In this document: in pieces, positions 1,743-37,316 of the stretch | Layout: every line of letters starts with the position of its first letter | Position numbering within the stretch: the first letter of the stretch is position 1 | NCBI RefSeq assembly: GCF_001194135.2 | Contig: NC_069000.1 | Coordinates: 15,452,416-15,489,731 of the forward strand | Direction of reading: 5' to 3' | DNA length: 37,316 bases | Source of the DNA: Octopus bimaculoides | Lineage: Eukaryota | Translations under genes and position numbers: made by a program | The notes under the pieces: model-generated | Told to the model about the DNA's origin: nothing | Seen by the model: only the letters and a program-made list of their open reading frames with translations | Database searches by the model: none

Positions 1743-1955
1743 TGCCCACAAGGGGCTAAACATAGAGGGGACAAACAAACGGATTAAGTCGATTACATCG
1801 ACTCCGGTGCGTAACTGGTACTTAATTTATCGACCCCGAATGGGGATGAAAGGCAAAGTCGACCTCGGCGAAATTTGAACTCAGAACCTAGCGGCAGACG
1901 AAATACCGCTAAGCATTTCGCCCGGCGTGCTAACGTTTCTGCCAGCTCTCCGCTT
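1743..1955 (-). mobile_element. tRNA-derived SINE family B (Deu/Nin-like central domain)
   Basis: The minus-strand head has an A box (TGGCAGAAACGTTAG) and a B box (GTTCAAATT). Many near-identical copies occur in the window. Confidence 0.8.
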
Positions 1956-2189
1956 TAGCTCCGTATCATTTTCTACCGAGTAGATTTATGACTAAAGGTG
2001 TTCCACTTCTGCCTGCCATCCCCGTTGAACAAATCAACCTCAGTATATGTCTATTTTTTAAAAATCTGGTACTTATTCGATCGTTCTCTATTGTCGAAAC
2101 ACTAAGTTACGGGAACGTATTCAAATCAACGCCGCTGGTGGGGCAAGCATAACCACACGGACTTCTACACAGTTACTTATTTCTTTATT

Positions 2190-4702: not shown

Positions 4703-7664
4703 CTGTGAAGAAGAAAAGAAAAAAAAAAGAAATATTAAAATTAACAAAAATGTAAAGAGATTGAGAAAAATGAAAAATGGGATAAAAAGAGAAAATTTCA
4801 ATAAATATAATCTCATAATTTACTTGATGTAGAGTGGTCGGTCATAGACATCATTGTATAATAAAGAAGTTTGCTTTATAACCACATGATTCCAAGTTCA
4901 ATTCCACAGTACTGTACCTTGTATAGATATCTTCTACCATAGCCTTGGGTTGACCAAAGACTTGTGAGTAAAATTTAATGAAAAGAAATGATGTGGAAGA
5001 CTATCAAATGGACTGAGAATACAAATTGGTTGAATGGAAGAGTCAACGACGATCCAGATGAAAGGTAGGCGACTCATGCTCTGTCCTGTCAGCATCAAAT
5101 ATCAGTGGTTATGACATTTAACTCGTCAGCATTCAGATTGCTTCGTCAAATGTAATGCTTATTTATTTGCATTGTTTTGAATTTATCATGCATGATCTCG
5201 CAGCTTCGAGATTCGATGGTGTGATTATTTATTTTTAGGATGACATTGTAGGGTAGGGGTGAGAGACCAGATCTGAAGATAAAACAGGTCGAATATTTTG
5301 GTTGGAAATGGCCAGATGAAATGCTAAAGAGAATACTTACTGCAAGTCTGTTTGACTGATTGCCACTCAGCATCTTCGAAGTATGCAGCAAATGATTCGT
5401 TGAGATTTGTTAGGGCACCACTTTTGAAAATCAACAAATTGAATATGATGTCAAAGTGCATGAAGTGAAGTCGATGGAAGCAGAGGAGGGATGCAATACT
5501 TTGTACAGTGAGAGACTCTGGTGATGGCTGTCTCTGGAATACCAGACAAGATCTCACTTCAACCTTCTGCCTCAGCAGTAAAAGCAGGAACTTGCCAATG
5601 AATGTAGATGTGTGAACACTTTGAGTCATGAGATCATTGTGTATTGCATAGAGGACTGTGAAGTTTCCGAAGACATTTGGATGATAGATGTTCGATTTGG
5701 CACCGTACTTCCAAAACAGTTTCAAACACTCTTCTCTCATCGTTTCAAAGGCTGCCATTATTGGTGGCATCAGGTTTTCACGAAGGTCGTTCACTGGAAA
5801 GCCGTATTGCAGCAGGATTTCAATGCACTGCACATCAGAACATTCTAGAACTGCATAGCTGAGCAGTGGCACAGTTCGTGGGTAGACACGACCAGACGAA
5901 AGTTGGTAAGTGACCGTGATATCAGTAGAAACATCATCCAACAATAGAAACTGTAAGATGCTCTGGTGAGACAAATCCAGAGACAGGGGTAGGGGAAACC
6001 ATTCAGAGAAGCATTTCTTGTGGATTTCTTCAATCTTAGTTACTTTGTACAGCAGCTTCACACATCTAGCAGAAGGAAAGAAATATATGTATTTATGTAG
6101 ATAATATTTTGAATGAAATAGTTGTAAGCTTTTTAGAGCAATATTTTGTCAATGAACAATTTATTGTAAACAGATTATCCATTCACAAAATGTTTGTTGT
6201 TTGATAGACTGGGAGATCATTACTTTGCTTAAAAACAAGTTGGGGGTTGGTAACAAGAAGGGCATCAGGTTGTAGTAAAATTGTTGAAGAAATGCCCCAG
6301 GGTGGTTGCAGTCTAATGACTAAACATTAGTGTAGGTGCTGATGCCTCATAAATAACACTGGTGATGGTGCCATGAAAAAAAGCACCCAGTGCACTCTGT
6401 GCAGTGGTTGGTACTAAGAAGAGCATCCAGCTGCAGAAACTAAGCCAAAACAGATCATGGAACCTGATGTAACCCTTGGCTTTGTCAGTTCTTGTGAAGC
6501 CGTCCAACCCATACCAGCATAGAAAACAGACATTCAATGTTGATGATGATAATATATATAACTTACTCAAGATTGTTACAAACAATGGCTGACTGCAGGG
6601 GACACACTGGTTCAGGATCAGAAGTGAAAAGGTTAGGGTTGGCATGATAAGATATCAACAGCTCAACACAGGAAGTATGGCCCTGTTGTGCGGCTACTAA
6701 TAATGGTGTGGCATTATCAAAAGCAGAAGCATCAACGAGATGAGATTTTCCTGTAAAAAAAAAAAAAAAAAAGAGAGAGAGAGAGAGAGAGGGAGATACA
6801 TTAAAGAAGTTTGATCATTTCTTATATTGCTCTTATCTCTTGCCTGTTCTAATCTGCTTTTGTTTTGATAAGCATGTCTGGTTTTAAATACTTGAGATTT
6901 CATTAACCAAGGAAACAGTTGATAGCATGATATACTTTAACCCTTTAGTGTTCAGATTACTCTGTCAGATGTAATGCTTGTTTATTGACATTGTTTTGAA
7001 TTAATTCTGCATTATCTCACAGCTTTGAGATTTCAATGATGTGATTGTATATTTTAGAAATGACATTGTTGAGTAGTGGAGCATACTAACTTCATTTCTT
7101 TCAAGTCCAACAGAGCATAAGAATGTAAAGGGTAAATGAATGACCACAGGATTGCACCTAGAAAGTTCCTCTTTGAGGCACAAGTCCGAGCAAGGCAGTT
7201 AATGGAAGACCAGCAGTTGCCCATGCATACCAGCCTCCCCTCTCCACACCACCAATGTTATCTGAGGGAAAGGTAAAGGCCAATACAGCTTGGCCCCAGT
7301 GATGTTGCAACTCATGAACTAGAGCAATGTGAAATAGTGTCTTGCTCAAGAACACAACAAACAGCCTGGTTCGGGAATCGAACACACAACCTCATGATTG
7401 TGAGCCTGATGCTCAAACCACTGAGCCATATAGATACTGATTAAGAATATCAGTAATATGGTGGAGGGAAAATATATCAGCAAATTAAATACAAGTATGT
7501 CTGCCCAATTAGGATTGAACTTGGACTAAATGATAACAATGAGATTATCATATCAGACTGCAAATGACTGCACAACATTATTTACATTGGACGGCTGATA
7601 TACCTTCATCAGGTGTCTTGGGGAAATTTCGAACCTGGGTTCTCATTCCTAAGGTATTTTTCGA

Positions 7665-17069: not shown

Positions 17070-17677
17070 TTTGAATGTTTTGATAAATCGATCCTTGAAA
17101 ACAATCTTAACAGCTTTTTTTGTTTTTGTATTCGGGATAGAACAATGTTGCGATTAAGAAATTATTATGGCAAAATAGAATATATAAAAAAAAAATTTTT
17201 CTTATTTTTATCAAGTCACCATGATGTCATAGTAGATAATTCTCTGTTTCTTTGATACATTATACTCTTAATCGAACATTACAATTAATTTTTAATTAAC
17301 GAAAAATTACAAAAGACACTCAACTTTGTTAAGTTTGTTTTGCAGCAGAAATTTACGAAAAAACGCTGTTAACTGATAACGGTGATAACCTTAGAAATCC
17401 CTCCTGTAATATTTATACGGGGGAACAAATTAATGTATGAGAAATTATAATATCTGGCTTAATTGATTGGCGATAAATAGCATCCGTGTTCAATAATTTT
17501 AACAATTTTGTAATCTCAGAGAATATTTTAGAATATAAATAATTCTATCGAGTTATTTCTCCAATCGTGTGTGTTTATATCATTTCACATGGAATCTAAT
17601 TAATTAAATTTACATAATTTTTAAACACCGAATCTAAGGGAGAGAACTGAAATACTGTCTTCGGTTTGTTTACAAAC
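17070..17677. promoter_or_regulatory. Probable bidirectional promoter and 5' UTRs of ASB3 and SPATA24-like
   Basis: Divergent start codons 608 bp apart, with no interspersed repeat in between. The SPATA24 start overlaps a YY1-type motif (reverse complement CGCCATGTTT). TSSs cannot be seen in the sequence. Confidence 0.6.
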
Positions 17678-18397
17678 ATGGCGTCGGATTGTGGTGAAAG
17701 TTCGGCGCCGACTCTAACAAGTGGTGTTACCACTGGTTACGAAGTGATACAGCAACAGTTTCAAGATTTATTGCAACTCAAAGACTTTTTAATTAACAAA
17801 ACTACGGAATTATCCTCCAAAGCTTCTGGACAGTCAAACAGTCACAATGAAAGTGCTACTGTTATGTCAGATTTTGATCATTCGAAATCATCAACTTTTA
17901 AGGGATCCGAAATATTGGATTCAGTGGTTTCCTGGAAACGATATGAATCAGTAGCTCAGGAATTGGAGATCGAGAAATTAAACCATTGCCGAACCAAAAC
18001 ACGCTGCTGTGAGCTAACTGATCATTTAGAAATATCACAGCAGCAAGTAGCCGCTCTACAGAAGCAGATACAAGACGACCGTGAAAGTTTCCGAAGAATT
18101 TTAAACTCCTTGAATAAATCTGTGAAACTTGAAAATGAAAAGAAATGTGAACTGGAGACCCGATGTAGTCAGCTTGAAGAGCAGAATAAGAAGCTGGATG
18201 AAAAATTAGCTTCTAGAATCTCGGAAGTTAAAAAGTTAAAAGGAAATTTACAAAAACAGAAAGAATTACAGAGCCGTAATTTGATGGAACTAGAAGTGAA
18301 CCGATGTCAACAAGACTACATTTCAAATTATCTTGATCAGTGTCATCAAACACGTATCAAGAAGTGTGAGCAAAATTATGCAACAAACAGAAAATAA
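17678..18397 (+). CDS. SPATA24: SPATA24-like coiled-coil protein, single coding exon, 239 aa
   Basis: ATG in ACAAACATGG context. VSWKRYESVAQELEIEKLNHCRTKTR...DDRESFRRILNSL...CQQDYISNYLDQ aligns by eye to human SPATA24 VSKEEFQAVEKKLVEEKAAHAKTKVL...EKLAFEKALSSV...QQESYMAQVLDQ (recalled). Confidence 0.8.
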   Translation: MASDCGESSAPTLTSGVTTGYEVIQQQFQDLLQLKDFLINKTTELSSKASGQSNSHNESATVMSDFDHSKSSTFKGSEILDSVVSWKRYESVAQELEIEKLNHCRTKTRCCELTDHLEISQQQVAALQKQIQDDRESFRRILNSLNKSVKLENEKKCELETRCSQLEEQNKKLDEKLASRISEVKKLKGNLQKQKELQSRNLMELEVNRCQQDYISNYLDQCHQTRIKKCEQNYATNRK

Positions 18398-22030: not shown

Positions 22031-22118
22031 GTTGTTTTATTAACCTTGGCAGTATTTTGGCTAAAGATTCTCAGAGAAGTCAATTGAGCACCAAATACAG
22101 GCACTGCTCTTGTGTGTG

Positions 22119-22119
<1 letters not shown>

Positions 22120-22205
<86 letters not shown>
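22120..22205. repeat. Long (TA)n microsatellite; other (TA)n tracts at 513-548, 13298-13325, 18595-18629 and 23732-23766
   Basis: Seen directly. Confidence 0.95.
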
Positions 22206-22209
<4 letters not shown>

Positions 22210-23168: not shown

Positions 23169-23379
23169 TTATTGCTGGCCTCGGTTTCGACACACTTGTA
23201 CTTGGGTTTCTACTGCTACCCCATCGCAAGAACAAGGACCATCAACTGGGGCGGCACAAGTTCTAGTTCGACTCATCTGGCCATCAACGCAAGCAGTCCA
23301 AGCAGACCAAGCACCGTAACTTCTCACCAGAGCGCAGACATCAGCAGCTGGCAAACTGTCACAGTCCACCAAGGGGTTA
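23169..23379 (-). CDS. Peroxidase last exon: domain end plus TSP1-like module (NPLVDCDSLP...YGAWSAWTAC...SRTRTC...CSCDG...VC)
   Basis: Polypyrimidine acceptor tcaacag; WxxWxxC and RxRxC motifs; TAA at 23169-23171. Confidence 0.88.
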
Positions 23380-23768: not shown

Positions 23769-26700
23769 GGGACGGGGTGTAGAGGTAAGATCCAAGGATC
23801 AAGGTGTAGGAAGTTAGTAAGCCTCGAGCAATCCGTAGAAGGTATTAAAAAAACAACTTTCACTCTTTTACTGTATGTTTTTAGCTAAGAACATGCTGGA
23901 CCACCATCTTGCTTTTCATACGACACACACACACACACACACACACGTATGTATAATGGATTTGTCCAATATTTTTGTCCTGACTTTCTCCTGAAACACC
24001 ATATTGTATATGTGTAACATATGTTCATGTTCATGCAGACAATTCGCTCTTACCAATCGAAAGTACCACGAAACCACTCGAGATTATCTCAGATAAACAT
24101 GTGACTAGTTATATATTAATTAACATCGGTGGAGAAGTACAACTCATAAGAGCGCTTTTTTTAAAAAAAAGCAAGCCATTTGTTTACTAAATTTCTTCAT
24201 CTCTGATGACAGAATACACCAAATGTTTACCTAAGTGAGCAACATATGCTGTAACATAAAACGAAATAATATAAACTAAACAAAACTTACGTGTCAGAGA
24301 TTCGCAGAAAAGCATCAGCTTGGATCTGTTCGATGTTGGTGTTGTCACAGATTAATCGAGACATTGTAACATTTCTTACAGCAGCCAAAGTATCTAAAAT
24401 GGAACATTGTTAGAGAGGGATATTTATTATAGGCCAGAAATTCACCTGTTAGAAATATCTTTACCCGAAAATAACCCCGTACACCACTTAATCCGAGACA
24501 GTTGACACCTTCCACTTATAACATATATTTCTTTTCCTAGCCTTAAAACAAACAAACAAGCAAACAAAGACAAAGCCGTTTCAATCTCCAAGGCCGTGCT
24601 ATTGTAGAGTGAAGAACCTCGACTACAATTAAGAGATGGTATAGCCAAGAATGGCACCATGTCACTAATCTTTTGAGAGAGGAATAAAATACTTGATCTC
24701 TTCTTTATCGATACAATAATGGTAAAAAAAAAAAAATCAAGTCGACAGGTGAGATTCGAAGTCAGGACATAAGTGAATACAACAATCATTATCTATCGAT
24801 GATATTTCACACCTACACGTTAAGACGAGGAAATCATATTCCCTTACATTGTTAGTGTTCCAAGTTCGTCAGCAATCGTAACACCACTACCGGCTATCAG
24901 AGTCTTGACCATAGCTTGGGTTGGTTTCAAAATGGTGACTCTAGGTGCGTGACTTTGGCAGTGTCCGGCAAAATGCAAATTTTCCTGCTATATTTCCCGT
25001 CAATAGAAGATGTGGCCATAGAGTTGCTCACTGGTCACTTTCTGCATCCAGCTTACGCTAAGCCCACTTGGAAAATCCGAATGTTGCAGCTATCGTGATT
25101 ACTGCTGTGTAGGCAATTTAACTGACTGAATTGACTCCAAATAACATTAGAGACTCACAACGAAGTATCTCGTTTTGTCTGGCTCTCTACCGAGATATCA
25201 CATTTTGTTTGACTTTCTATCGAGATACCACATTTTGAGTGACTCTACTGATTTTGGCATCCTAACGCCGTTCTAATTTAAACATACATAAAAGCTGGTC
25301 ATTAAAAGACTTTTTGTATTACCGAGCGATAACTGGTTGGGGCCGGCATTTTCGTACCAGAATCTGTCTCCGACTTTCAAAGCTTGGAACTGTCGTGCTG
25401 TAATGCAAGCTAATGTAGGACCAACACCGCCACCTGCAACTTGAGTTTCAGACACACCACCACTCCATACGTCAATATCGGCAACACTCCTGAAAAATGT
25501 AAAGACAAAAATGTGTTATTAGTATAAATGGGGGTAATGGGAAAAACTGAGATCTCTTACATGCAGAAATGTGTTTGTTTGGGCGTATGGTTAAAACGTT
25601 CACTTCTCAAATTTCAGGTTCAGTCGTATTGCGCGGTTTCTTGAGCATATGTCTTCTAGCTCCGGGTCAACTAATGCATTGTGAGTGAATTTGGTAGACG
25701 GAAACTGTGTGGAAGTCGAGCTGACAGAATCGTTAGCACACCGAGCGAAATGCTTAGCGTTATTTCGTCTGCCTTTACGTTCTGAGTTCAAATTCCGCCG
25801 GGGTCGACTTTGCCTTTCATCCTTTCGGGGTCGATAAATAAAGTACCAGTTACGCACTGGGGTCGATGTAATCGACTTAATCCGTTTGTCTGTCCTTGTT
25901 TGTCCCCTCTATGTTTAGCCCCTTGTGGCCAATAAAGAAATAGAAAACTGTTGGAAGTCCATCATACATATATATTTATGTGTGTGTGTGTGTGTGTCTT
26001 TGTGTTTGCATTTTTCCCATCCTGTTTGACAACTGGCGTTGGTTTATTTAACTTAGCAGTGACCGCTGGAATAAGTACAGAACTTAAAAAGTACGTACTG
26101 GGGGTGGGGTCGACTTGTTTGATTAAACCCCTTCAAATTTATGCCCCAGAATGGCTGCTTTCCAATGAGAGAAACAAGTAAGAGATAAAAGATGCGATAA
26201 GAGAAAGTTACCCGAGGAATTAACATACGTTAAAGACGAGCTAATTTCGATTTTTGATAGTAACTTGGTTGCAGGAATGTCTGTGCGTTTAAGAAGCTGT
26301 TTCGCAACTATGTGGTTACGGATTGGCTGCCTCTTTTTTGCGTAGCACTGCACAACAATTTCAGTAATGTCTGATCTCCGATCAAGGGATAACTTACGCA
26401 CTTCTTCATGGACACCCTTATTATTTTAAAACTTCAAAATATATGTAATATAAACTCAAGGCACCCTTCGTGTTGCGGAATCGTTGCATTCCTGAAAATA
26501 TTTCTGTAACATGGAGTTCCGTAACGAGAAACCCACTTATCACTGGCTTTCTCTTTGCATAGAAGTTAAAGTGAGAGGAAATTATTTTGCGTCACGAAAT
26601 CTTACACCGCGGCAAAGTTCTCAAGAATGTCATACTGTGATAAAGCGAAGGGCGCCTATATTTGACTCCATGTTTATATTCGTAGGAAGGGCTGGAAAGT

Positions 26701-29570
26701 TAAAAGGAATAATATTTATAAATCTGATAACATGAATATCGTTAGATATTGATTTCTAATACTGGCACTAGGCATTACGTGGGTGTGAATGTGTGTGTGT
26801 GTGTGAGAGAGACAGACAGACAGACTGACAGAGCGGGAGAGGGGGAGAAAGAGAGAGAGAGGGGAGAGAGAAAGAGAAAAGGAGAGAAAGAGGAAGGGGA
26901 GAGAGGGAAAGGGAGAAAAAGAGACATAAAGAGAGAGAGAGAGAGATGAACTCACTCGTAAAGTTGTGAAAGAAGGTTTTGATTTTCTTCAGTGTGGTCT
27001 ACGAGGTCTGTGAAGTTTTCAGGAACAGACAATCCACACCACTGTCTCCAAGCTGTGTATGTTGGGATTCCGTTATCACGTCCTTGCTGGATGTCTAGTG
27101 CAGCTAAATCCCAGCCATTTCCTGGGGCTGTTTCAACTAATCTGTTGGTTAGATCTTCCGACATCAGTCTGCAAAAAAAAGAAAAAAAAAAGAATAACAA
27201 TGTACACATAACGGCTACCGTAACTATTGTTATTTAGTTCAGCTCCGTTCGAACCGAGAAGACTGATGGTCAAAGGCATTCTAGCTGTTACAATCCTATA
27301 TGTCTTCATCTTTTAAAACTATTTTGTTACCATGTGTGTTGGCACTCCGTCGCTTACGACGTCGAGGGTTCCAGTCGATCCGATCAACGGAACAGCCTGC
27401 TCGTGAAATTAACGTGCAAGTGGCTGAGCACTCCACAGACACGTGTACCCTTAACGTAATCCTCGGGGAGATTCAGCGTGACACAGTGTGAGAAGGCTGG
27501 CCCCTTTGAAATACAGGCACAACAGAAACAGGAAGTAAGAGTGAGAGAAAGTTGTGGTGAAAGAGTGCAGCAGGGTTCGCCTCGTGGAGCTTTAAGTGTT
27601 TTCGCTCAATAAACACTCACAACGCCCGGTCTAGGAATCGAAACCACGATCCTATGATCGCAAGTCCGTTGCCCTAACCACTGGGCTATTGCGCCTCCAT
27701 TTTGTTACCATATTTCTATTGAAATATTCTGCCTTTTTGTTGTGTCTGGGGAGAGTCATTCTCTTTTAGTGCCTTATTTGATACACTCACCGGTAAAGTT
27801 TCCACTCACGAACTCACATAAAGGATCTTGTAAACCAAATCCAAAAGCGAAATACACTGCTTTTTATTTCTATAAAATAACAAACCTGTTCATTTGTAAC
27901 GTAATTTTTCCTAAACGCTCTAACAAAATGTAAAAAACGAAAAGAATCGAACGATGTCTCCCGACAGTAACTTAAAAAGAAAAATTATTTTGAAAATTTC
28001 TTCGGATTTTAAAGTTTTAACACAAAATAATTACTTTAAACAAGTAATTACAGATGTCGATAAAGAAATACAAACAGGTGTTTCTAAAAATTGTATTTAG
28101 GTGAAAGATAGGTTTAAATGAATGTAAATCAAAACGGCAATAATATATTAACTTTTTTTCTCTGTCGTTGAGAGAAAGGTTTAAATGTGGCTTCTGTCGG
28201 AAAGCCGCACTTAATCTTTCAAAATGATACACTTACTCCTTCAGAAGGCCGCAAGTTCTCGGTGTCGGGAATGAAGTTCTTAGACAAAAAGAACATCAAC
28301 ATCGACAATAAAAATACTCAAACACTATAAGGAAGATGTAATTATACCGTTATTCGATACTAGCTGAAACATCCCCTCGGAGGATGTTGTTTCAGCAGAT
28401 ATTGAATAAAGTATCAATATAGGTTACATTATGTATGAAAACTCAAACGTCTTTGCTCTTAGCGTTACTATCCTCAACAAATGGTTTTACCTGTCAACTT
28501 CTTGTGCCAAATCAGAGATAAGTCCTCGGTAAACTAAAGTAGGGGCATCGGTTTCTCCATAGAAAACATCTGCGTTATAGAACAGGGAACTAAGAGCATT
28601 CTGAGTTTCTCCAATGGAAATAAGGCTTCTAATTCCGGAGTGACTGTAGATAATACCAGCAGCGCCGAAACCATTACGAACAGCAGGATTGATGTTACCT
28701 ATGTACAAGGAGTAACCTTCTGTAAGTGAGTTCAGATTGTAGGTGTTCATAATATCAGGGCCGAGTACTTTGGGTAGATATTCGTCGTATGCAATGTGTT
28801 GCATCTCAGAAATGACGATTTTGCGAGCTTCTTGAAAGACGATTTCGTCGGTCCAATCTGGTTGGGCGGTGCTCAGAACGTTAGCTACGCGGTTGTGTTC
28901 TCGAAGGAAGAGTGTGTGTTGGGACATCATCATAGGTTGTACATTAACTCGATTATCACCTGAAGCGGGGAAAAAACATAACAAAAATAAAACCAAACAA
29001 AAAGCATGTTAAAATGAGTGAAGTGTTATATTGATATGAAACGGTAATGGAAATAAATACAGGGCGCGACAGAAAGGTTGCCCCAATTTCAAAGATTAAT
29101 AAAAAAAAAACAAAAAAAACCGCTTGAAGGTACAAGAAAAAACGATGCTCCAGGCGATGGTGGATACTACCTGAAACGGAAAAAATGACATTTAATGAAC
29201 TTCTTAGAAATCCAACGTTTTTTCATGCATCTTCTTCTGTATATTTTTTTTATTAATTATTGAAATCAGGGCAACCTTTCTGCCGCACCATGTATATTGT
29301 AAATGTATTGATGACGTAAACTTGTACCGGATTCCTCGAAATTCTAGATAGATTTTACTTTATAAATCACGTATTTAGTACAGAAGAGGTCTGTTAGTCA
29401 AGTGTCATTGTTATTTAGCAATTGCCTGGAACAGTGGAGTAGTGGTTAAGGTTGGACTACCCAAACACTATGTGTTCTTGTATTGAAACTCGCTCGCAGA
29501 AGATTTTATCCATCTGCCTATCTCTCCCTTTCTTTCAACCTATCTATCTCGTCCCACATATGCACACACA

Positions 29571-29601
<31 letters not shown>

Positions 29602-32600
29602 GCGAATAGAGAGGGAGAAAAGCGGTAGAAGTAGAAACATGGTCCTAACGTGTTAAAGAATTCCATTTGATGTTTTGTTTTGACACACATCATTCAAATA
29701 TTGAAGTAAATTGGTATTTTACATTGGCACATTATTTTATCACACACACAATCGCACACACACACACACACACACACAGAGGCTTTCACACAGTTATCGT
29801 TTAGCAGATTCACTGACAAGTCATTTGTCGGCCTGGAGCTATTGTAGAAAGCGCTTGCCCAAGGTACCGCACAGTGGGACCGAACCCAAAAGTCATGTGT
29901 TTGCAAAGCAAGTTACTAAAGTATACAACCTCTAAGAAAAGATCAGTGCTCAAGATCCTTTAAAGGGTTTCCGATAATGTTGGAAGAAGGGAGGAAGATA
30001 TTCTAGTCCCGGAGACCTGACCTCAATGTTTACAACAGGGTTGACTCCGCTGAAGACCACCAAGGATCAGGTGGTGGTGTTAAACCGGGTGACGCTTGGA
30101 GTCTACCAACTAAGTTGGCCGTAATGAGATTTGAACCCAGAACCGTCAGAGGTGGAACGAATATCGCAAGGTATTTGGTCCCACACTTCAACGTTTCTGC
30201 CAGTCTACTGCTATAGTTCTTATACTTTATATATCGACCCCACGAAGGATAAAATGCCTGATTAACTTCGGTGGAGCCTGAATAATTACCGCAGTGCATT
30301 TCATCGACGTCCCTAAAGTGAGTCCACTGTAAGAAGCATAAGGATGATTTCCCGGTTTCTCTGATGTATATACACCTCCCTGCACGGGACGGGACGCCAG
30401 TCCGTCGCAGGATTACTCATTTTCACCAGACGAGTGGACTGGAGCAACGTGAAACGAAGTGTTTTGCTCAAAAACACAACGAATCGCCCAGTTCAGGAAT
30501 CGAAACAACACTCTTACGATCGTGAATCCAACACCCTAACCACTAAGCCATGCACCTCCCTAAAGACTGCTAACTCTGTTAAAATATACATTGATAATTA
30601 AGAGAATAACCCACCTCCAATGAAGCAGAGGTTTCCTTCAGAGGCAAGACAGAATGTGGTGTTAGACTGGGGTAGAAGGTCGAGGTCATCAGTCGGGGTT
30701 GTTCGCATTAGTCCTGCAAATATAGAAGACAAAATAATTTAAATCGACCTCATAAGAACGAATACAAATTATGTATGCATACACGCGTACGTACGCATAA
30801 ATAGGAATACTCTCTCTCTTTCTCTCTCCTACACACACACACACAAGGAAAAGACATGATGGACATAACATACACTCACCCACAAACATAAAACTTACCA
30901 CCAGTCATTGTCCTTAGTGTGGTTTGCCTAGTCAAATCTGAGCCATACACTTGAGATGCATCTATGTAGCTAGTTGCGCCGTTCAACTGTTCACGTGGAC
31001 CTGAAATATGATAATGAAAGAAACTATTTTACAAACTGTTACACGCATCAACAAAACGACATTCATGATACTGATTTTGAATTTTGGCACAAGGCCAGCA
31101 ATTTAGGGGGAGGGGCTAAGTCGGTTATATCGACCCCCAGTGCTCAACTGGCACTTATTTCATTGACCCTGAAAGAATGAAAGGCAAAATCGACCAGGGT
31201 CTCTAGAATCAGTGAGGAGAAACGACGAACCAACTCTCCGCCAGGTTTTCTACAACTTTCTCGCCAAGATTACTCTTACATTTTCGAAGCCACAAAGATT
31301 CATAAATTAGAAATAAAGTAAATAAATACATATACATCGCATCTGGACATTTGAAATGCTTGTCGAAACTAAAGCTGCTGTTAGCAAGCAGCATCTAAAT
31401 TCGTGAATTGTTTTGTTATTTGCCTTTAATATTTTTCGAAAAAAAGCAACATTTTTATTAATTTTTCCTCAGACAAAGATTAAGAATAATCTTTTATACT
31501 TTAGGCACAAGGCCCGAAATTTTGGGGAGTGGCGCAGTCGATTATATCGACCTCAGTATGCAACTGGTACTTAATTTATCAATCCCGAAAGGATAAAAGG
31601 CAAAGCCGACTTGGGCGGAATTTGAACTCAGAGAGAAGAAATACCGCTAAGCATTTCGCCCGGCGTGTTAACGTTTCTACCAGCTCGCCGCGTTAAATAT
31701 TACAAATAATCTTTTCTACTCTAGGCATAAGGCCCGTAACTTTTGGGGAGGAGGCCAGTCGATTAGGTCGATCCCAGTACGCAACTGGAACTTAATTTAT
31801 CGACCCCGAAAGGATAAAAGGCAAAACAGACCTCGGCGGAATTTGAACTCAGAACGTAAAGACAGACGAAATGCCGCTAAGCATTTCGCCCAGCGTGTCA
31901 ACATTTCTGCCAGCTCGCCGCCTTAAAGATTATAAATGACGTAAGCATACTTACCCAAAGCGCAGGAAAGTGGGGGAGTGGCTAGGCTACGGGTGTATGC
32001 CATGCATGTTCTNNNNNNNNNNNNNNNNNNNNNNNNNNNNNNNNNNNNNNNNNNNNNNNNNNNNNNNNNNNNNNNNNNNNNNNNNNNNNNNNNNNNNNNN
32101 NNNNNNNNNNNNNNNNNNNNNNNNNNNNNNNNNNNNNNNNNNNNNNNNNNNNNNNNNNNNNNNNNNNNNNNNNNNNNNNNNNNNNNNNNNNNNNNNNNNN
32201 NNNNNNNNNNNNNNNNNNNNNNNNNNNNNNNNNNNNNNNNNNNNNNNNNNNNNNNNNNNNNNNNNNNNNNNNNNNNNNNNNNNNNNNNNNNNNNNNNNNN
32301 NNNNNNNNNNNNNNNNNNNNNNNNNNNNNNNNNNNNNNNNNNNNNNNNNNNNNNNNNNNNNNNNNNNNNNNNNNNNGGCGGAATTTGAACTCAGAGAGAA
32401 GAAATACCGCTAAGCATTTCGCCCAGCGTGTCAACATTTCTGCCAGCTCGCCGCCTTAAATCAACGATATTCATATCCAATTTTGTTTTGGTGTGATAGG
32501 GATAGAATTTGTTCAAATAAGAACTACCACGTTACATGTGACAAACCAAAACAATAACTTGAATTTAGCAACGTAACTCAGAACGCTCATTAATTTATTG

Positions 32601-34779
32601 CATCGTGTTTCCGTTTAATTACAGCAAGAGGCAGCGAGTTCATATACCAGTGACCTCTTCATGGGATCGTTGAGTACTTATTGGTTCCTACCATGTAAAT
32701 TTCTATATCTAAAATTAAAACGTATCTTTTATCTCTTACTTGTTTCAGTCATTAGACTGCGGCCATGCTAGGACACTGCCTTGAAGAATTTCTAGTCGGA
32801 TGTATCGATCCTAGTGCTTTTATTCTAAGCCTGCTACTTATTCTATCGGTTACTTTTGCCGAAGCGATTTTAATAAGAAATATTTGAAGAAATTTAATGA
32901 AACTACTCAACGAAATTGATAAAGAATAATAAAAATTCAGTGGTATTATATTGGTATAGTTAGACTGCTTAATGTGAAATATGTGTGGCAAATGCAAGTT
33001 ATTGCATCGATATTTAGTTGAGGATCAGAGAGTAAAATTACTGCACTCTTCCAGATTCCGTTCGTTAACAATTCAGCCTCCTCTGGTGTTTATCGATTAC
33101 ATAGTTGTTGTTGTTGTTGGCACTCCGTCGCTTACGACGTCGAGGGTTCCAGTTGATCCGATCAACGGAACAGCCTGCTCATGAAATTAACGTGCAAGTG
33201 GCTGAGCACTCCACAGACATGTGTACCCTTAACGTAGTTCTCGGGGATATTCAGCGTGACACAGTGTGACAAGGCTGACCCTTTGAATTACAGGCACAAC
33301 AGAAACAGGAAGAAAGAATGAGAGAAAGTTGTGGTGGAAGAGTACAGCAGGGTTCGCCACCATACCCTGCCGGAGCCTCGTGGAGCTTTAGGTGTTTTTG
33401 CTCAATAAACACTCACAACGCCCACTGGGCCATTGCGCCTCCACATCGATTACATAGAAACCCCAAAGATCAATATTGATAACTTTGCCGACCACTGAAT
33501 TTCAGTATTCAGCTGTAAGTTCTCATCTGTTTATAGCTACGTGGAGCGTATCTTTTGAGAATTAAGTACCTCGAAAAGAAACAAAGTGCATTGGCTGAAA
33601 CGTCAGCTTCTTAACCATACACACTTCTCATATAACACTGGATGTTGTTGTTTAGACCCCAGGTCAATTCTGATCGAGCTTTTCAGCATGGATCAATGAA
33701 TCACCCCTCGAAAGATGAGATGTGATTCATTGAACCATCTTCTCCTCATAAAATACCGGGTCTTGTTGCTTAGACCCAGGCAGTCTCTCAAAGGACGGGG
33801 TGTGATTCATTGATCCATCTTCCCAGCTATACTATGTCTCTACCCAACTGAAGACCATTAAGTCGCTCAACCAACTGAATTTATACTGGTGAAATTAACG
33901 TGTTAGCGGTTGAGTATTCCGCAAACATTTGTATCTTTAATGTCATTCTCAGACCAAATCAGTGCGATGCTATGTGACATGGCTGGACGTTTTAAGTCAT
34001 ATATGTAGTCCAGAGAGAGAGAGAGAGAGAAAAAAAAAAAAAAGAATTGACCCAAGTAATAAATCGGTACTGTATTTATCGACCCCTAAAGGATGAAAGG
34101 GAAATTTAATTTGAGCAGGTTTGGAACACAGAGAGCAGAGAGCCGAATCGAATACCGTCAAGAGTTCAATCTGACGTTCTGCTAATTCCGTCAATTCATC
34201 ACCTTTAATATGGTATTACTTACATGTCATCAGTTTCACAGCAGTCACCTGGTAGAAAAGAACAAGAAGAAAATAGTCGTTATTTTATAAATGGATTAAA
34301 CAACGAGATAAGGGTACACCAGCCACATGCAGCACAACCATATGTGCGCGACATGGTGATCTCATATCAAGATAAACAGCGCATGACCTCGCAGGTGGAA
34401 CCCAGTTAGAATTTTCCTCAGGTCGAGTAGCCCATCCCGCTCAAAAGTTCCTTGAATAAGGTTTGTTTAAGGATGTTCAGCAAAACACCCATGTTTCCAA
34501 AGGTAAATTATTCAAACCCCAAAGAATTCCTCTCAACAACACATGGCTATGATGCTCCCCCACTACTTCTGCTCACGATCAGAGATGCACATATCGTCAG
34601 CCACCAAGGGACATGCTCAACTGGTTAAGGTCAAACAACTGACAAGCAAATCTGTGGTATTGAGCAGAATATTTGCTGTAGCTCATCTTTTATACCAAGA
34701 CAACACAATGTACATGATAACACTTCCAATCAATTAAGATCAGAAGCCATGAGAGTCACTGCCTGGTACTGCATCCGGG

Positions 34780-34843
<64 letters not shown>

Positions 34844-37316
34844 GTTAATATTATTATTATTATTATTTTACTGGAATTTGACGAAGCCATTGCGAATAAG
34901 AAGCAGTAATGCATTTAGTAAGGGTATCAATTCAGTCTTTGAATTCGATCAAGGAAATTTGGAAAAGTCATTGGCATTGTTCTTGAAGATATCGTAATTT
35001 GAAAGTAACCTCACAGTTTACCTATTCTCTCATCTACAATTTCTTTCTCTCGTAATCACTCCCTCTTTCCCTCTTACCTTTTCTCTCTTTCTCATTTCAC
35101 ACACACACACACGTTCACACATATATGAATTTATATTAGACCAATTACATATTCCATATAAGGCCGTGTATATTTATACAAGATCTTACCACTTGTTGGC
35201 ATAGCAGGATAATCTTGAAGATCGTGGTTGAGGAATACACCGAACATTGTTTTCAGATGGGTAAAATCAGGATTGACGTTTTCTTCAGTACTGGCGCCAT
35301 GGAATGTTGTACTAACCAATCGAGCTCCAGGAAGGTTTCCTCCATTAACACCGGTAGCACGAGGAGCGCTGAGATCTATTGAGAAACAAAAAAGAAAATT
35401 CATTTTATTTTATTCACAGTGTATTTTTGAAGTATAAGATTTCTTTTATTATTTTTGAAAATAATATTGTAGAAAACCTCAAATTTGTAGAGAAAGTGAA
35501 ACGGGATGTTATGGTTTCCGTGCGTTTTCGAAATCCGTCAATGAAATGGAACATGAAAGTAAGTAAATAAGTACAAACTGAAAATGGAACTCGAGCCGCG
35601 GATTTACAGAAGAATCGAACCCGCGATGCCATTTTACATGTATGTATGTATGTATGTATGTATGTATGTATGTCATTATTCAATCTTGTTTCAAGATTTC
35701 TTGCTAATAGAGGAAGAGCCTGTTTCTAACCTAGATCCAAGGTTTCTTTGGAATTTCAACAACAACAAGGCATTTTTGTATGTATGTACATACATACATA
35801 CATACATACATATGTAGGTTCTCAAAACCAGAAAGGAGAAAGCAAGACTTTTCTCAAGTTCCAAATGTGAATCGGTTTGTGTTAACTACATCCCAAAGAT
35901 AGAGCCTTGTATCTTTGTTAGAAACCGGCTCCCTCAGTGGAAGAGTTATAATAATTAAAAAATAGAAGAGACATACATACATACATACATACATACATGC
36001 ATACATACATACATACATACATACATACATGCATACATAGGCATAATAAGAAGGAGCACTGGTGGAATGTCTCAGTTAAAACCTCAATAAATTGTAAACA
36101 TAACCAACTTGATATAGTGATTTGGAATAGAGAAGAGAAACTGAGTATAGCAGCAGAAATCAGCTGCCTATCAGATGTTAACCTAAAGCTAACGATCGGC
36201 GAAAAATACTCTACCCAGATTACAAGTTCAGGTTTATTCTTGTAATTATTAGGGCACTAGGATACGTAGCACACTGCCTAAGTAACAATCTTGAGAAATT
36301 AAGGCTTCTCCGAACCAGAAAGGTTAAATCTGATTCGAAGACAACAGATCTAAGTCATCATTGGAACTGTAAAAAGTCGTAGGACTTCCCAGAAATTTAT
36401 CATTTAAGTGCGCATGTCTGGAAATGCAACTATATACGTGAGAAAACAGACATAAAAAAAATCATACAAATCTGCACATGCACTGACTCCAAATACTGCA
36501 CACATAGACACATGCAGTGAAGGAGCCTTGGATCTAGGTTAGAAACCGGCTCTTTCTCTATTGACATTATGATGGGCGTGACATTAATTCCGACTCTTGA
36601 GATTATTCATTCTAACTTACCGTCTTCGTAAACAGCTGGCAAATAACGATCGAAAGGAGTGTTTGATCGGCCAAGATAGGGGAACTGAATGTTGTTACAA
36701 GAGCCATCAGCAGAACGGTAAGGAGCTGCAACATCACAAGTTAAGGCTTCGACGAACGGACAATTCTCAACAAGTTCCAAAGGAGGCTGGACTGCAGGTA
36801 GAAGATTTTCTGCTGTGATAGCTCCATCGTCTAACCTGAAAAATAATTTATTCTTTTCTTAATGGTCACAAGGACTAATATAAATCACAAGACTATAGTA
36901 GAAAGCACTTTCCCAAATGGGACTGAACCTGGTACAATGTGGTTGGGAAGCAAACTTCTTACCACACAGCCATGCCTGCGCCTATGTATATATATATGAT
37001 GAGCTTCTTTCAGTTTCCGCCTACCAAATCCACTCACAACGATTTAATCGGTCCGAGGCTATAATAGAAAACACTTGTCCAAGGTCTCACGCAGTGGGAT
37101 TGAAACCGGAACCATGTTGTTGTGGAGCAAGTTTCTTACAGCCACGCCTTTTTGTTCAACCATTCTAACCATTCTGCCAAGCCGCCGGAGATGGCGGAGC
37201 AACGATGATCATGATGGTGATGATGATGATGAAAAGGTGGAGGGAGAGGAGAAGAAACTAAGCGATCGACTTACAGCTGTTGAATCAGTCTTCCAGTGAC
37301 CACAAATACAAGACCG
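23169..37316 (-). CDS. Animal haem peroxidase family protein (chorion peroxidase/peroxidasin-like domain) with C-terminal TSP1-like module, 5' incomplete; join(37275->37316, 36621-36835, 35190-35375, 34224-34248, 31955->32012, 30899-31000, 30615-30713, 28491-28959, 26956-27168, 25323-25489, 24291-24393, 23169-23379)
   Basis: Family motifs appear in order: [95 protein letters not shown]. All visible junctions are GT-AG and phase-compatible. Confidence 0.92.
24291..24393 (-). CDS. Peroxidase exon (DTLAAVRNVTMSRLICDNTNIEQIQADAFLRISD)
   Basis: Acceptor cattttag, donor GTAAGT; xxICDN motif. Confidence 0.9.
25323..25489 (-). CDS. Peroxidase exon (SVADIDVWSGGVSE...[33 protein letters not shown])
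   Basis: GDRFWYEN motif; AG/GT junctions. Confidence 0.93.
25575..25945 (+). mobile_element. SINE family A head followed by a young SINE family B copy
   Basis: GTGAGTGAATTTGGTAGACGGAAACTG (family A) followed by GAGCTGACAGAATCGTTAGC...GTTTAGCCCCTTGTGG (family B). Confidence 0.75.
26956..27168 (-). CDS. Peroxidase exon (LMSEDLTNRL...[27 protein letters not shown]...QLY)
   Basis: Acceptor ttttgcag, donor GTGAGT. Confidence 0.93.
27334..27698 (-). mobile_element. SINE family C copy with perfect 13-bp TSD
   Basis: ATTTTGTTACCAT at 27321-27333 and 27699-27711. Confidence 0.88.
28491..28959 (-). CDS. Peroxidase exon with distal Arg and proximal His (GDNRVNVQP...REHNR...GIIYSHSG...QEVD)
   Basis: Open frame of 155 codons with family motifs. 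Confidence 0.95.
30310..30560 (-). mobile_element. CORE-type SINE
   Basis: Homologous to 11952-12212. Confidence 0.7.
30615..30713 (-). CDS. Peroxidase exon (GLMRTTPTDDLDLLPQSNTTFCLASEGNLCFIG)
   Basis: Acceptor atttgcag, donor GTGGGT; joins to GDNR. Confidence 0.9.
30899..31000 (-). CDS. Peroxidase exon ([34 protein letters not shown])
   Basis: Ca-binding TSYIDAS motif; AG/GTAAGT junctions. Confidence 0.92.
31495..31925 (-). mobile_element. Two tandem SINE family B copies (further fragments at 31085-31200, 32377-32458 and 34050-34205)
   Basis: Two head-to-tail units of about 215 bp starting (T/C)TAGGCA(C/T)AAGGCCCG. Confidence 0.8.
31955..32012 (-). CDS. Peroxidase exon, 3' part only (RTCMAYTRSLATPPLSCAL); 5' part lies in the N gap
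   Basis: CMxxxRS...C motif and donor GTAAGT; abuts gap 32013-32376. Confidence 0.85.
33105..33444 (-). mobile_element. SINE family C copy with perfect 13-bp TSD and an internal head deletion
   Basis: ATCGATTACATAG at 33092-33104 and 33445-33457; the B-box region is missing (CAACGCCC joins ACTGGG). Confidence 0.88.
34224..34248 (-). CDS. Peroxidase 25-nt microexon (GDCCETDD)
   Basis: Strong polypyrimidine acceptor ttttctaccag and donor GTAAGT; correct incoming phase; supplies the CC motif expected here. Confidence 0.75.
34782..34868. repeat. (ATT)n microsatellite
   Basis: Seen directly. Confidence 0.95.
35190..35375 (-). CDS. Peroxidase exon with distal His (DLSAPR...LPGARLVS...[19 protein letters not shown])
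   Basis: Acceptor ctcaatag, donor GTAAGA. Confidence 0.92.
35972..36040. repeat. (TACA)n microsatellite; complementary (TATG)n at 35638-35672
   Basis: Seen directly. Confidence 0.9.
36621..36835 (-). CDS. Peroxidase exon (LDDGAIT...[39 protein letters not shown])
   Basis: Acceptor tttttcag, donor GTAAGT; YRxxDGxCNN motif. Confidence 0.92.
36870..37150 (-). mobile_element. Two adjacent SINE family A head fragments
   Basis: CTATA(G/A)TAGAA...CCAA...GGGA(C/T)TGAA..CC occurs twice. Confidence 0.65.
37275..37316 (-). CDS. Peroxidase exon running out of the window (GLVFVVTGRLIQQL)
   Basis: Donor GTAAGT at 37274-37269; phase 2 joins the next exon in frame. Confidence 0.65.

What the first reader, a model, noticed from the sequence alone, without database searches (positions are those of the whole stretch)
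26956..35375. Peroxidase with a systematically remodelled haem pocket: possible pseudo-enzyme or new chemistry
Seen: the ORF is intact across all visible exons. It keeps distal His (NHD, 35224-35226), distal Arg (GDNR), proximal His (YSHS, 28640-28642) and the Ca-site TSYIDAS. Established (myeloperoxidase numbering, recalled): Q91, D94 and E242 (ester links), R333 and R424 (propionate contacts), N421 (partner of proximal His) and H428 are normally conserved. Here they read WGQxLDHD to FGVFLNHD (Q to V, D to N), RxxE to RVNV (E to V), FRYGH to IIYSH (R to I), and LNMQRSRDHG to LDIQQGRDNG (N to D, R to Q, H to N). Inference: seven coordinated changes in an otherwise conserved fold suggest non-covalent or absent haem, or a retuned redox potential (a His-Asp proximal pair, as in the unrelated plant/fungal peroxidases). 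The protein may be a structural or adhesive matrix component rather than a halide peroxidase. Cephalopods are known to use this family in the ink gland and light organ.
Basis: partly seen in the sequence, partly recalled or inferred. Interest (0 to 1): 0.75.

Follow-up and report, generated by a model that had tools for sequence, protein, structure and literature searches.

The report
Octopus peroxidase with remodelled haem pocket
This is the Octopus bimaculoides copy of the squid light-organ "halide peroxidase" gene; it and all its cephalopod orthologues keep the catalytic histidines and arginine but have replaced nearly every other residue that normally holds and tunes the haem, which sits badly with the bleach-making role usually given to the squid enzyme.

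Summary
A HMMER alignment to lactoperoxidase and myeloperoxidase confirms Q91V, D94N, E242V, R333I, N421D, R424Q and H428N. His95, Asp96, Arg239, His336 and the Ca site are kept, at the stated coordinates.

The gene lies on the minus strand and is larger than the finding: 12 exons from beyond 37316 down to a TAA at 23171-23169, with every readable junction GT-AG. The N gap is not intronic. It removes about 60 nt from the 5' end of exon 3b, so public octopus models lack 20 residues there.

The substitutions are neither errors nor decay:
- V91, N94, V242 and I333 are invariant in O. vulgaris, Argonauta, Euprymna scolopes (AAA16245.1) and three further loci.
- dN/dS is about 0.17.
- Across about 200 homologues, Q91, R333 and R424 change almost only in cephalopod paralogues.
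- Positions 421, 424 and 428 vary within the clade, so the His-Asp idea is not a conserved design.
- Paralogues that lost a catalytic His sit on much longer tree branches.

Best reading (about 0.5): a secreted peroxidase with non-covalently bound haem, a low redox potential and a TSP1-like tail, unlikely to oxidise chloride. A haem-free pseudo-enzyme remains possible (about 0.25). This is a new variant of a known kind; interest is moderate.

The parts
37275..37316 (-). Exon cut by the window edge (..GLVFVVTGRLIQQL); the signal peptide and N-terminal region lie beyond the window
   Evidence: tblastn of P0035/P0038; donor GTAAGT
36621..36835 (-). Exon: start of the peroxidase domain (CPFVEALTCDVAAPYRSADGSCNN..AVYED)
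   Evidence: 100% match to P0035; AG/GT junctions
35189..35375 (-). Exon with the distal motif FGVFLNHDL: V(Q91) 35238-35236, N(D94) 35229-35227, H95 35226-35224, D96 35223-35221
34224..34248 (-). 25-nt micro-exon 3a (G)DCCETDD, with acceptor ..ctaccag and donor gtaagt
   Evidence: the squid orthologue has the equivalent mini-exon at L001:2325-2369
32013..32376 (.). Assembly gap (364 N) hiding the 5' ~60 nt of exon 3b (expected x-V-C-Y-P-I-x-x-P-x-x-D-x-Y-F-x-x-Y-G) and its acceptor; the upstream flank 32377-32458 is a SINE-like repeat copy
31955..32012 (-). Readable 3' part of exon 3b (RTCMAYTRSLATPPLSCALG), donor GTAAGT
30899..31000 (-). Exon with the Ca-site motif TSYIDAS (T168 30974-30972, D172 30962-30960, S174 30956-30954)
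30615..30713 (-). Exon LMRTTPTDDLDLLPQSNTTFCLASEGNLCFIG
28491..28959 (-). Large exon: GDNRVNVQP (R239 28951-28949, V(E242) 28942-28940) and GIIYSHS (I(R333) 28651-28649, S(G335) 28645-28643, H336 28642-28640)
26956..27168 (-). Exon with LDIQQGRDNG: D(N421) 27095-27093, Q(R424) 27086-27084, N(H428) 27074-27072
25323..25489 (-). Exon SVADIDVWSGGVSE..GDRFWYENAGPNQLS
24291..24393 (-). Exon ..AAVRNVTMSRLICDNTNIEQIQADAFLRISD
23169..23379 (-). Last exon: C-terminal Cys-rich TSP1-like domain (WSAWTACVDGQMSRTRTC..) and TAA stop at 23171-23169
   Evidence: (TSP_1 22.4 bits vs cut-off 21.6 when scanned alone)

Best explanation
This is a functional, secreted cephalopod peroxidase-like gene, the O. bimaculoides orthologue of the Euprymna scolopes light-organ 'halide peroxidase' cDNA product. 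It keeps the animal-peroxidase fold, the Ca2+ site and the minimal catalytic apparatus: distal His95 and Arg239, and proximal His336.

Before octopods and decapods split, its lineage replaced the rest of the haem environment. It lost the halide-binding Gln91 (to Val), both ester-forming acids (Asp94 to Asn, Glu242 to Val) and both propionate-anchoring arginines (Arg333 to Ile; Arg424 to Gln/Ser/Ala/Val). It also lost the fixed identity of the proximal His partner.

Inferred mechanism: haem b is held non-covalently in a more hydrophobic pocket. H2O2 can still form Compound I through His95/Arg239. The redox potential is much lower than in MPO or LPO. The enzyme would therefore oxidise one-electron donors (o-dianisidine in vitro; phenols, indoles or catechols in vivo) and perhaps iodide or thiocyanate, but not chloride and hardly bromide. 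The C-terminal TSP1-like domain would tether it to matrix, mucus or cell surfaces.

Shown here: the gene structure, the residue states, their conservation, purifying selection, orthology and the fold. Inferred: haem binding, the type of chemistry and tethering.
For: Residue mapping is by HMMER to LPO/MPO.

Conservation of the substitutions:
- V91/N94/V242/I333 are identical in O. vulgaris, Argonauta hians, E. scolopes AAA16245.1 and the decapod transcript P0040 (which lacks the region holding residues 91-94), and in genomic loci L001-L003.
- His95, Arg239, His336 and the Ca site are invariant in the clade.

Selection and rates:
- dN/dS on exon 6 is 0.18 (window vs L002) and 0.165 (L001 vs L003).
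- Octopus-to-squid identity is 70.5%, against 54% for the paralogue that still has R333/R424 (P0042's decapod origin is assumed, not checked).
- O. bimaculoides-to-O. vulgaris identity is 93.9%, against 92.5-94.5% for the paralogue.
- In the NJ tree the clade has 100% bootstrap and splits into an octopod and a decapod half. The His-less paralogues P0041 and P0046 have branches of 0.32-0.53, against 0.03-0.10 inside the clade.

Structure and transcripts:
- 75 of 86 family-invariant columns are retained.
- The AlphaFold model has pLDDT 85.5 and matches LPO/MPO with target-normalised TM 0.82-0.86.
- Every readable splice site is canonical.
- A spliced decapod transcript exists (P0040, a 513-aa ORF on a 2.1-kb contig).

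Literature:
- In this superfamily the number of haem-protein ester bonds correlates with E0' and with halide-oxidising capacity. DdPoxA, with one ester bond, cannot oxidise chloride (PMC5787809).
- Gln of the G-Q-x-x-D-H-D motif is implicated in halide binding (PMC4420034).
- From memory, not re-read: Weis et al. 1996 PNAS reported that an antibody to a fragment of the squid cDNA product (LO4) immunoprecipitated o-dianisidine peroxidase activity from light-organ extract.
Against: - No residue is left to pair with the haem propionates (R333I, R424Q/S/A/V, H428N/I).
- Positions 421, 424 and 428 drift within the clade. This is what one would expect if that face no longer touches a haem.
- E. scolopes has Lys at 421, which cannot accept the proximal His hydrogen bond.
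- Three polar-to-beta-branched hydrophobic changes (V91, V242, I333) could equally be pocket infill.
- Cephalopods have several paralogues that clearly lost catalysis, so this family tolerates non-catalytic members.
- No haem, spectrum or activity was or could be measured here.
- The model id returned by the structure tool gives no coordinates for a pocket analysis.
- The squid field describes the orthologue as making HOCl (PMC3843225; PMC6386654), which contradicts my 'no chloride oxidation' inference.
Confidence: 0.5

Rival explanations
1. Pseudo-enzyme: the protein no longer binds haem and acts as a secreted structural, adhesive or binding protein, with the peroxidase fold and TSP1-like tail as a scaffold. 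The peroxidase activity reported for the squid light organ would then belong to another of the many paralogues.
For: - Seven second-shell or linking residues are lost, including both propionate arginines, which are otherwise invariant (112/120 and 112/119; 89/91 and 90/91).
- Positions 421, 424 and 428 drift within the clade.
- The replacements at 91, 242 and 333 are hydrophobic.
- There is a marginal TSP_1 domain.
- Sister paralogues have lost catalytic His residues: P0041, P0046, P0155-P0157.
- E. scolopes has 14 expanded peroxidases, six of them in the light-organ cluster (PMC6386654). From memory, the anti-LO4 antibody also reacted with human MPO, so cross-reaction is plausible.
Against: - His95, Arg239 and His336 and their flanking motifs are invariant across the octopod-decapod split, with dN/dS of about 0.17.
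- Lineages that really lost a catalytic His have 3-5x longer branches.
- The clade is more conserved than its R333/R424-containing paralogue.
- There is no RGD/KGD integrin motif.
Confidence: 0.25
2. Bona fide halide (Cl-/Br-) peroxidase, as the squid literature names it: despite the substitutions, the protein makes hypohalous acid through a pocket solution different from MPO and LPO.
For: Reviews and genome papers state that the squid light-organ HPO converts H2O2 to HOCl or hypohalous acid, citing Tomarev 1993, Weis 1996 and Small & McFall-Ngai 1999 (PMC3843225; PMC6386654; PMC3187790). The catalytic His/Arg/His residues are kept.
Against: - Gln91, implicated in halide binding, is Val (PMC4420034).
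- Both ester-forming residues are absent. In the superfamily, fewer covalent links mean a lower E0', and chloride oxidation is already lost with one ester bond (PMC5787809).
- The halide-dependent assays were, as far as I recall, done on tissue extracts or fractions that could contain several paralogues.
Confidence: 0.15
3. Artefact or decaying pseudogene: the substitutions are sequencing or assembly errors, or neutral drift in a dead gene.
For: The window comes from a gapped draft assembly (five N runs). One exon is partly unread.
Against: - The same residues occur in independent assemblies and transcripts of at least six other cephalopods.
- All readable exons are open, with canonical splice sites.
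- dN/dS is far below 1.
Confidence: 0.02

Closest known systems
Euprymna scolopes light-organ peroxidase-like protein / 'halide peroxidase' (AAA16245.1, UniProt Q24926; Tomarev 1993, Weis 1996)
   Same: Orthologous clade (100% bootstrap). 70.5% identity. A squid genomic orthologue (L001) has the same exon layout, including the mini-exon. Same C-terminal Cys-rich TSP1-like tail. Same V91/N94/H95/R239/V242/I333/H336.
   Different: The squid protein has a long Ala-rich N-terminal insert and K421/A424/I428, where octopus has D/Q/N. The squid gene sits in a lineage-specific tandem expansion expressed in the light organ (PMC6386654). Octopus has no light organ, and no second copy is visible in this window.
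Mammalian myeloperoxidase / lactoperoxidase (family 1 of the peroxidase-cyclooxygenase superfamily)
   Same: Pfam An_peroxidase over the full model. Fold TM 0.82-0.86. Distal His and Arg, proximal His and the Ca site are kept.
   Different: It lacks the distal Gln, both ester-forming Asp and Glu (and MPO's Met243), the proximal Asn, and Arg333, Arg424 and His428. It has an added TSP1-like tail. It shows no sign of the propeptide or heavy/light-chain organisation.
Dictyostelium peroxidase A (DdPoxA, PDB 6ERC)
   Same: A secreted superfamily member with fewer haem-protein links (the distal Asp is replaced) and correspondingly reduced halide chemistry (PMC5787809). It is a structural match (rank 25).
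   Different: DdPoxA still has the Glu ester bond and fully conserved distal (Gln-His-Arg) and proximal (His-Asn-Arg) triads. The octopus protein keeps only His and Arg distally and only His proximally.
DUOX peroxidase-homology domain and other His-less peroxidase-like proteins
   Same: The same fold (ranks 26-34) with a degenerate haem pocket. Cephalopod paralogues P0041, P0046 and P0155-P0157 are of this kind.
   Different: Those proteins have lost the proximal and/or distal His. This gene retains both under purifying selection.
Invertebrate peroxinectins (family 3) and peroxidasins (family 2)
   Same: Secreted invertebrate peroxidase-domain proteins fused to an adhesion- or matrix-type module.
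   Different: There is no KGD/RGD motif and no LRR, Ig or vWC domains. The accessory module here is a single marginal TSP1-like domain. The canonical members of those families keep Q-x-x-D-H-D and R-x-x-E.

Membership tests
Animal haem peroxidase domain (Pfam PF03098; peroxidase-cyclooxygenase superfamily) | Profile match above the curated cut-off, and the LPO/MPO fold | tested here: met
   Full-length model: 501 bits against a cut-off of 25, covering profile positions 1-530. Single exons score 28.6-137 bits. Foldseek TM 0.82-0.86 to LPO/MPO.
Animal haem peroxidase, canonical active site | Distal catalytic His and Arg, and the proximal His ligand | tested here: met
   H95, R239 and H336 are aligned by HMMER and invariant in the clade.
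Animal haem peroxidase, canonical active site | Distal motif G-Q-x-x-D-H-D: halide-binding Gln and ester-forming Asp (PMC4420034) | tested here: not met
   The motif reads G-V-F-L-N-H-D. Gln is Q in 111/118 and 87/91 homologues, with nearly all exceptions in cephalopod paralogues.
Animal haem peroxidase, canonical active site | R-x-x-E motif: Glu forming the second haem ester bond | tested here: not met
   The motif reads R-V-N-V. V is conserved in all orthologues.
Animal haem peroxidase, canonical active site | Proximal triad His-Asn-Arg (N421, R424), plus R333 and H428 (recalled as haem-propionate contacts) | tested here: not met
   The residues are D421, Q424, I333 and N428. R333 and R424 are otherwise invariant. 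The propionate-contact role of R333, R424 and H428 is recalled from the MPO structure literature and was not re-read.
Animal haem peroxidase | Distal Ca2+-binding site (D96, T168, D172, S174) | tested here: met
   NHD and TSYIDAS are present.
Animal haem peroxidase | Binds haem and turns over H2O2 | not testable with these tools
   This needs recombinant protein. There is only indirect literature on the squid orthologue, and Weis 1996 is not held in the library.
Cephalopod light-organ peroxidase-like (EsHPO) clade | Orthology to E. scolopes AAA16245.1: monophyly, gene structure and the C-terminal TSP1-like tail | tested here: met
   NJ bootstrap 100, with octopod and decapod halves. The exon layout is shared with the squid locus L001. 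The tail aligns throughout.
Peroxinectin (family 3) | Integrin-binding KGD/RGD motif; cell-adhesion activity | tested here: not met
   There is no RGD/KGD in P0035, P0037, P0038 or P0039. Adhesion activity is not testable here.
Peroxidasin (family 2) | LRR, Ig and vWC domains flanking the peroxidase domain | tested here: not met
   Pfam finds only An_peroxidase and a marginal TSP_1.
His-less pseudo-peroxidase (DUOX-type domain) | Loss of the proximal and/or distal His | tested here: not met
   Both His residues are retained.

The most novel reading that the evidence does not exclude
The whole clade, including the textbook squid light-organ 'halide peroxidase', no longer binds haem in the canonical way. 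It would be either haem-free or a low-potential non-halogenating enzyme. In that case the HOCl production attributed to it in the squid-Vibrio symbiosis comes from a different protein or does not occur as described. The clade's real role would be something else, such as a matrix- or mucus-tethered binding protein or an oxidase of phenolic or indolic substrates.
Probability: 0.25. Interest if true: 0.7.

Novelty: new variant of a known kind. Interest (0 to 1): 0.55.

Why it matters
The squid orthologue has been cited for thirty years as the enzyme that makes hypohalous acid in the Euprymna-Vibrio light organ. The sequence shows that it and its octopus orthologue lack three things that work on the superfamily ties to halide oxidation and haem anchoring: the halide-binding Gln, both haem ester links and both propionate arginines.

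Either outcome is worth knowing. This fold may be able to run peroxidase chemistry with only His/Arg/His and a hydrophobic pocket, which would be a natural minimal version of the animal peroxidase site and useful for understanding what the covalent links are for. Or the biochemical attribution in the symbiosis model needs revisiting.

The clade also belongs to a graded cephalopod series: amide-type, then hydrophobic-type, then His-less. That series is a natural experiment in how an enzyme pocket is dismantled or retuned.

Practically, the public octopus gene models for this locus are wrong around the assembly gap.

Tried and rejected
- Second peroxidase gene in the window: tblastn with five paralogues found nothing outside the one gene.
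- Hidden part of exon 3b elsewhere in the window: only micro-exon 3a was found. The remainder must lie in the gap.
- Treating the public models P0035 and XP_052831162.1 as proof that the 20 residues are truly absent: rejected.
  - Their junction uses the first two readable bases after the Ns as an acceptor.
  - They lose a Cys that is invariant in at least 90% of homologues.
  - That stretch has pLDDT below 50.
  - The squid orthologue has one continuous exon there.
- Reading Weis et al. 1996 by PubMed id, PMC id and DOI: not held.
- Literature searches for any discussion of the haem pocket of EsHPO/LO4, for the UniProt accession, and for the superfamily term together with Euprymna: nothing found.
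- Sepia 'melanogenic peroxidase': not recovered among the listed top hits (best 120 each) of either protein search, so I could not place it.
- dN/dS between octopus and squid is saturated (dS of 2 or more, or undefined). I used only the closer pairs.
- The first bootstrap tree script timed out. It was redone with a faster distance routine.
- The AlphaFold output gives no coordinates, so the pocket volume and a docked haem could not be examined.
Full report
**What is there**

The window is eukaryotic, about 37% G+C, with five N runs. The finding sits in one multi-exon gene on the minus strand. Three exon translations hit Pfam An_peroxidase on their own.

A protein search shows the window is Octopus bimaculoides. 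UniParc UPI00071D43B6 (P0035) is 100% identical over every readable exon. UniProt A0A0L8FXZ4 and RefSeq XP_052831162.1 are models of the same locus.

With P0035 as a guide, each readable junction has a canonical AG/GT pair and reproduces the protein exactly. The exons are:
- 37316 (cut by the window edge)-37275
- 36835-36621
- 35375-35189
- 34248-34224, a 25-nt micro-exon
- (gap)-32012..31955
- 31000-30899
- 30713-30615
- 28959-28491
- 27168-26956
- 25489-25323
- 24393-24291
- 23379-23169, ending in TAA

The gene is therefore much larger than the 26956-35375 of the finding, and its 5' end lies outside the window.

**The assembly gap**

The Ns at 32013-32376 are not intronic. Coding sequence (AGA ACA TGC ATG = R-T-C-M) starts at 32012, the first base after the gap.

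In a squid orthologous locus (L001, ENA contig ctg122843l) the equivalent exon is a single 120-nt exon, 'SAICYPIALPANDSYFGQYGRTCMEFVRSLASPPLTCTLG', preceded by a separate mini-exon. About 60 nt, or 20 codons, of octopus exon 3b are therefore hidden.

The public models P0035 and XP_052831162.1 bridge the gap by using the first two readable bases (AG) as an acceptor. As a result:
- they lack those 20 residues, including a Cys that is invariant in at least 90% of homologues;
- AlphaFold gives pLDDT below 50 exactly there, at residues 242-251.

A0A0L8FXZ4 instead inserts a repeat-derived pseudo-exon and a retained intron. The O. vulgaris model skips both exons 3a and 3b.

The upstream flank of the gap is one of at least eight copies of a SINE-like repeat. 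Two more copies lie within 500 bp downstream of the exon, which probably explains the gap. Continuity across the gap cannot be proven from this window, but the frames on both sides fit the orthologue's structure.

**The observation**

- Changed: Q91V, D94N, E242V, R333I, N421D, R424Q, H428N.
- Kept: H95, D96, R239, H336, T168, D172, S174.

An unbiased scan adds G335S and a Leu-to-Met change in the helix after residue 242.

The frequencies in homologues are:

| Residue | First set of 120 | Second set of 91 |
|---|---|---|
| Q91 | 111/118 | 87/91 |
| R333 | 112/120 | 89/91 |
| R424 | 112/119 | 90/91 |

Essentially all exceptions are cephalopod paralogues. D94 and E242 are lost more widely: 95/120 keep D and 91/120 keep E, and several bivalves have Val at 242. 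Loss of the ester links alone is therefore not unusual for molluscs.

Of 86 columns that are at least 93% conserved in 108 canonical homologues, 11 are changed in this clade. All five second-shell haem contacts in that set are among them (p about 1e-5, with the residue class chosen post hoc).

**Not an error, not decay**

The same V91/N94/V242/I333 set with H95/R239/H336 is present in:
- O. vulgaris (93.9% identity)
- Argonauta hians (83%)
- E. scolopes AAA16245.1 (70.5%)
- a spliced decapod transcript (P0040; its ORF starts after residues 91-94, so it confirms V242/I333/H336 only)
- three genomic loci from other sequencing projects

Nei-Gojobori dN/dS on exon 6 is 0.18 (window vs L002) and 0.165 (L001 vs L003).

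A neighbour-joining tree with 200 bootstraps gives a cephalopod-only clade at 99.5%. Inside it, this clade has 100% support and splits into an octopod and a decapod half, so the remodelled pocket predates that split.

The clade is at least as conserved as its paralogue that still has R333, N421 and R424:
- octopus to squid: 70.5% against 54% (P0042 taken as the decapod paralogue, which was not verified);
- O. bimaculoides to O. vulgaris: 93.9% against 92.5-94.5%.

**A change of constraint**

Within the clade, positions 91, 94, 242 and 333 are fixed. Positions 421 (D/N/K), 424 (Q/S/A/V) and 428 (N/I) vary, and 421 differs even between the two Octopus species.

The 'His-Asp pair' is therefore not a conserved design. 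The proximal and propionate face looks released from its ancestral constraint, while the distal face is under a new one.

Cephalopods hold a graded series:
- an 'amide' type, Q-N-H / R-x-x-Q / R-H-N-R (P0042-P0045);
- this hydrophobic type;
- types that lost the distal His (P0041, a Sepia transcript), the proximal His (P0046, P0157) or both (P0155, and P0156 from O. bimaculoides).

The His-less lineages have tree branches of 0.32-0.53, against 0.03-0.10 inside this clade.

**Architecture and fold**

Pfam finds An_peroxidase across the whole profile, plus a marginal C-terminal TSP_1 domain. That domain scores 22.4 bits against a cut-off of 21.6 when scanned alone, and is sub-threshold in the full protein. 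There are no LRR, Ig or vWC domains and no RGD/KGD motif.

The full-length models start with a signal-peptide-like MIRPSLILLLAVLPYIVLC, which is encoded outside the window.

The AlphaFold model has mean pLDDT 85.5 and pTM 0.86. It matches LPO, MPO and proMPO with target-normalised TM 0.82-0.86.

**What it most likely does**

Published work on the superfamily:
- defines G-Q-x-x-D-H-D and R-x-x-E as signature motifs, with the Gln implicated in halide binding and a proximal His-Asn pair (PMC4420034);
- shows that reduction potential and halide-oxidising capacity fall with the number of haem-protein ester bonds. DdPoxA, with one ester bond but intact Gln-His-Arg and His-Asn-Arg triads, cannot oxidise chloride (PMC5787809).

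This gene has no ester-forming residue and no Gln, and keeps only His and Arg distally and His proximally. The conservation pattern argues that iron-haem chemistry is still selected for.

I therefore favour (about 0.5) a non-covalent, low-potential haem b peroxidase for one-electron donors, and possibly for iodide or thiocyanate, tethered by its TSP1-like tail.

The squid orthologue is the protein that the symbiosis literature calls the light-organ halide peroxidase and credits with HOCl production (PMC6386654; PMC3187790; PMC3843225).

From memory, Weis et al. 1996 showed that an antibody to a fragment of the cDNA product precipitated o-dianisidine peroxidase activity and also cross-reacted with human MPO. 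I could not re-read that paper. Dianisidine activity fits my reading. Chloride oxidation does not.

With 14 expanded peroxidases in E. scolopes, six of them in the light-organ cluster, misattribution among paralogues is possible.

**Rivals**

- A haem-free pseudo-enzyme (about 0.25) is supported by the loss of every propionate partner, the drift at 421, 424 and 428, and the family's evident tolerance of dead members. It is opposed by the invariant His/Arg/His and the slow rate.
- A true chloride or bromide peroxidase (about 0.15) is supported only by the literature name.
- Artefact or pseudogene is rejected for the readable part (about 0.02).

**Novelty**

The gene and its squid orthologue are known and annotated. 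I found no paper that notes the pocket remodelling. The library is incomplete, and older peroxidase-phylogeny papers may mention it.

I rate it as a new variant of a known kind, of moderate interest. It gives a direct, testable challenge to a long-standing functional attribution, and a natural minimal version of the animal peroxidase active site.

Noticed in passing
window 31955-34248 (minus strand): All public models of this octopus gene are defective around the gap. XP_052831162.1 and UPI00071D43B6 splice micro-exon 3a to the first AG after the Ns and lose 20 residues. A0A0L8FXZ4 uses a repeat-derived pseudo-exon (about 33172) and a retained intron (30416-30033). The O. vulgaris model skips exons 3a and 3b.
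   Followed up: yes
window 1724-1957, 2204-2418, 2625-2802, 25679-25950, 31117-31195, 31536-31695, 31757-31925, 32377-32458: SINE-like interspersed repeat of about 170-235 bp, 77-91% identical between copies. One copy abuts the N gap and two lie just downstream of exon 3b, which is a likely cause of the assembly gap.
   Followed up: partly
window ~33172, ~27460, ~22729, ~10780 (minus strand): A second repeat family whose translation reads CSVDRINWNPRRRKRRSA. It has been annotated as coding sequence in public models (P0036, and the N-terminus of paralogue P0043).
   Followed up: partly
window 37275-37316: The exon GLVFVVTGRLIQQL is conserved in O. vulgaris, Argonauta and E. scolopes, but RefSeq XP_052831162.1 replaces it with an unrelated stretch (CCYCHTFLFNNAYSDSG..). 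That is probably another model error or an alternative exon outside the window.
   Followed up: no
window 17666-18397 (+): A 243-aa coiled-coil ORF matching Pfam SPATA24 (E 5.8e-19); a neighbouring gene or exon on the opposite strand.
   Followed up: partly
window 5324-6061 (-): A 245-aa ORF with sub-threshold ankyrin-repeat matches (Ank_2, 25.5 bits against a cut-off of 27.3).
   Followed up: partly
L001:10971-11072: In the squid orthologous locus, a partial duplicate of the 3' end of the large exon (NTLSSLFYNSDVFYSGTDAPTLVFQGLTTDM) lies about 500 bp downstream of the real exon.
   Followed up: no
L001 and L004 (ENA contig ctg122843l, 195-216 kb and 402-423 kb): The remodelled-pocket gene and an 'amide-type' paralogue (P0004, FRFGHS) are linked about 207 kb apart in the same orientation. 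Retrotransposon ORFs (RVT_1, rve) lie next to the paralogue.
   Followed up: partly
proteins P0041, P0046, P0155, P0156, P0157: Cephalopods carry several further peroxidase-like paralogues that have lost the distal His, the proximal His or both. One of them is an O. bimaculoides protein annotated as 'chorion peroxidase'. This is a family-wide series of pocket decay.
   Followed up: partly
window 34756-34914, 22083-22208, 35958-36071: Long simple repeats (AAT/ATT, TA and CATA-type microsatellites) in introns; ordinary for this genome.
   Followed up: no
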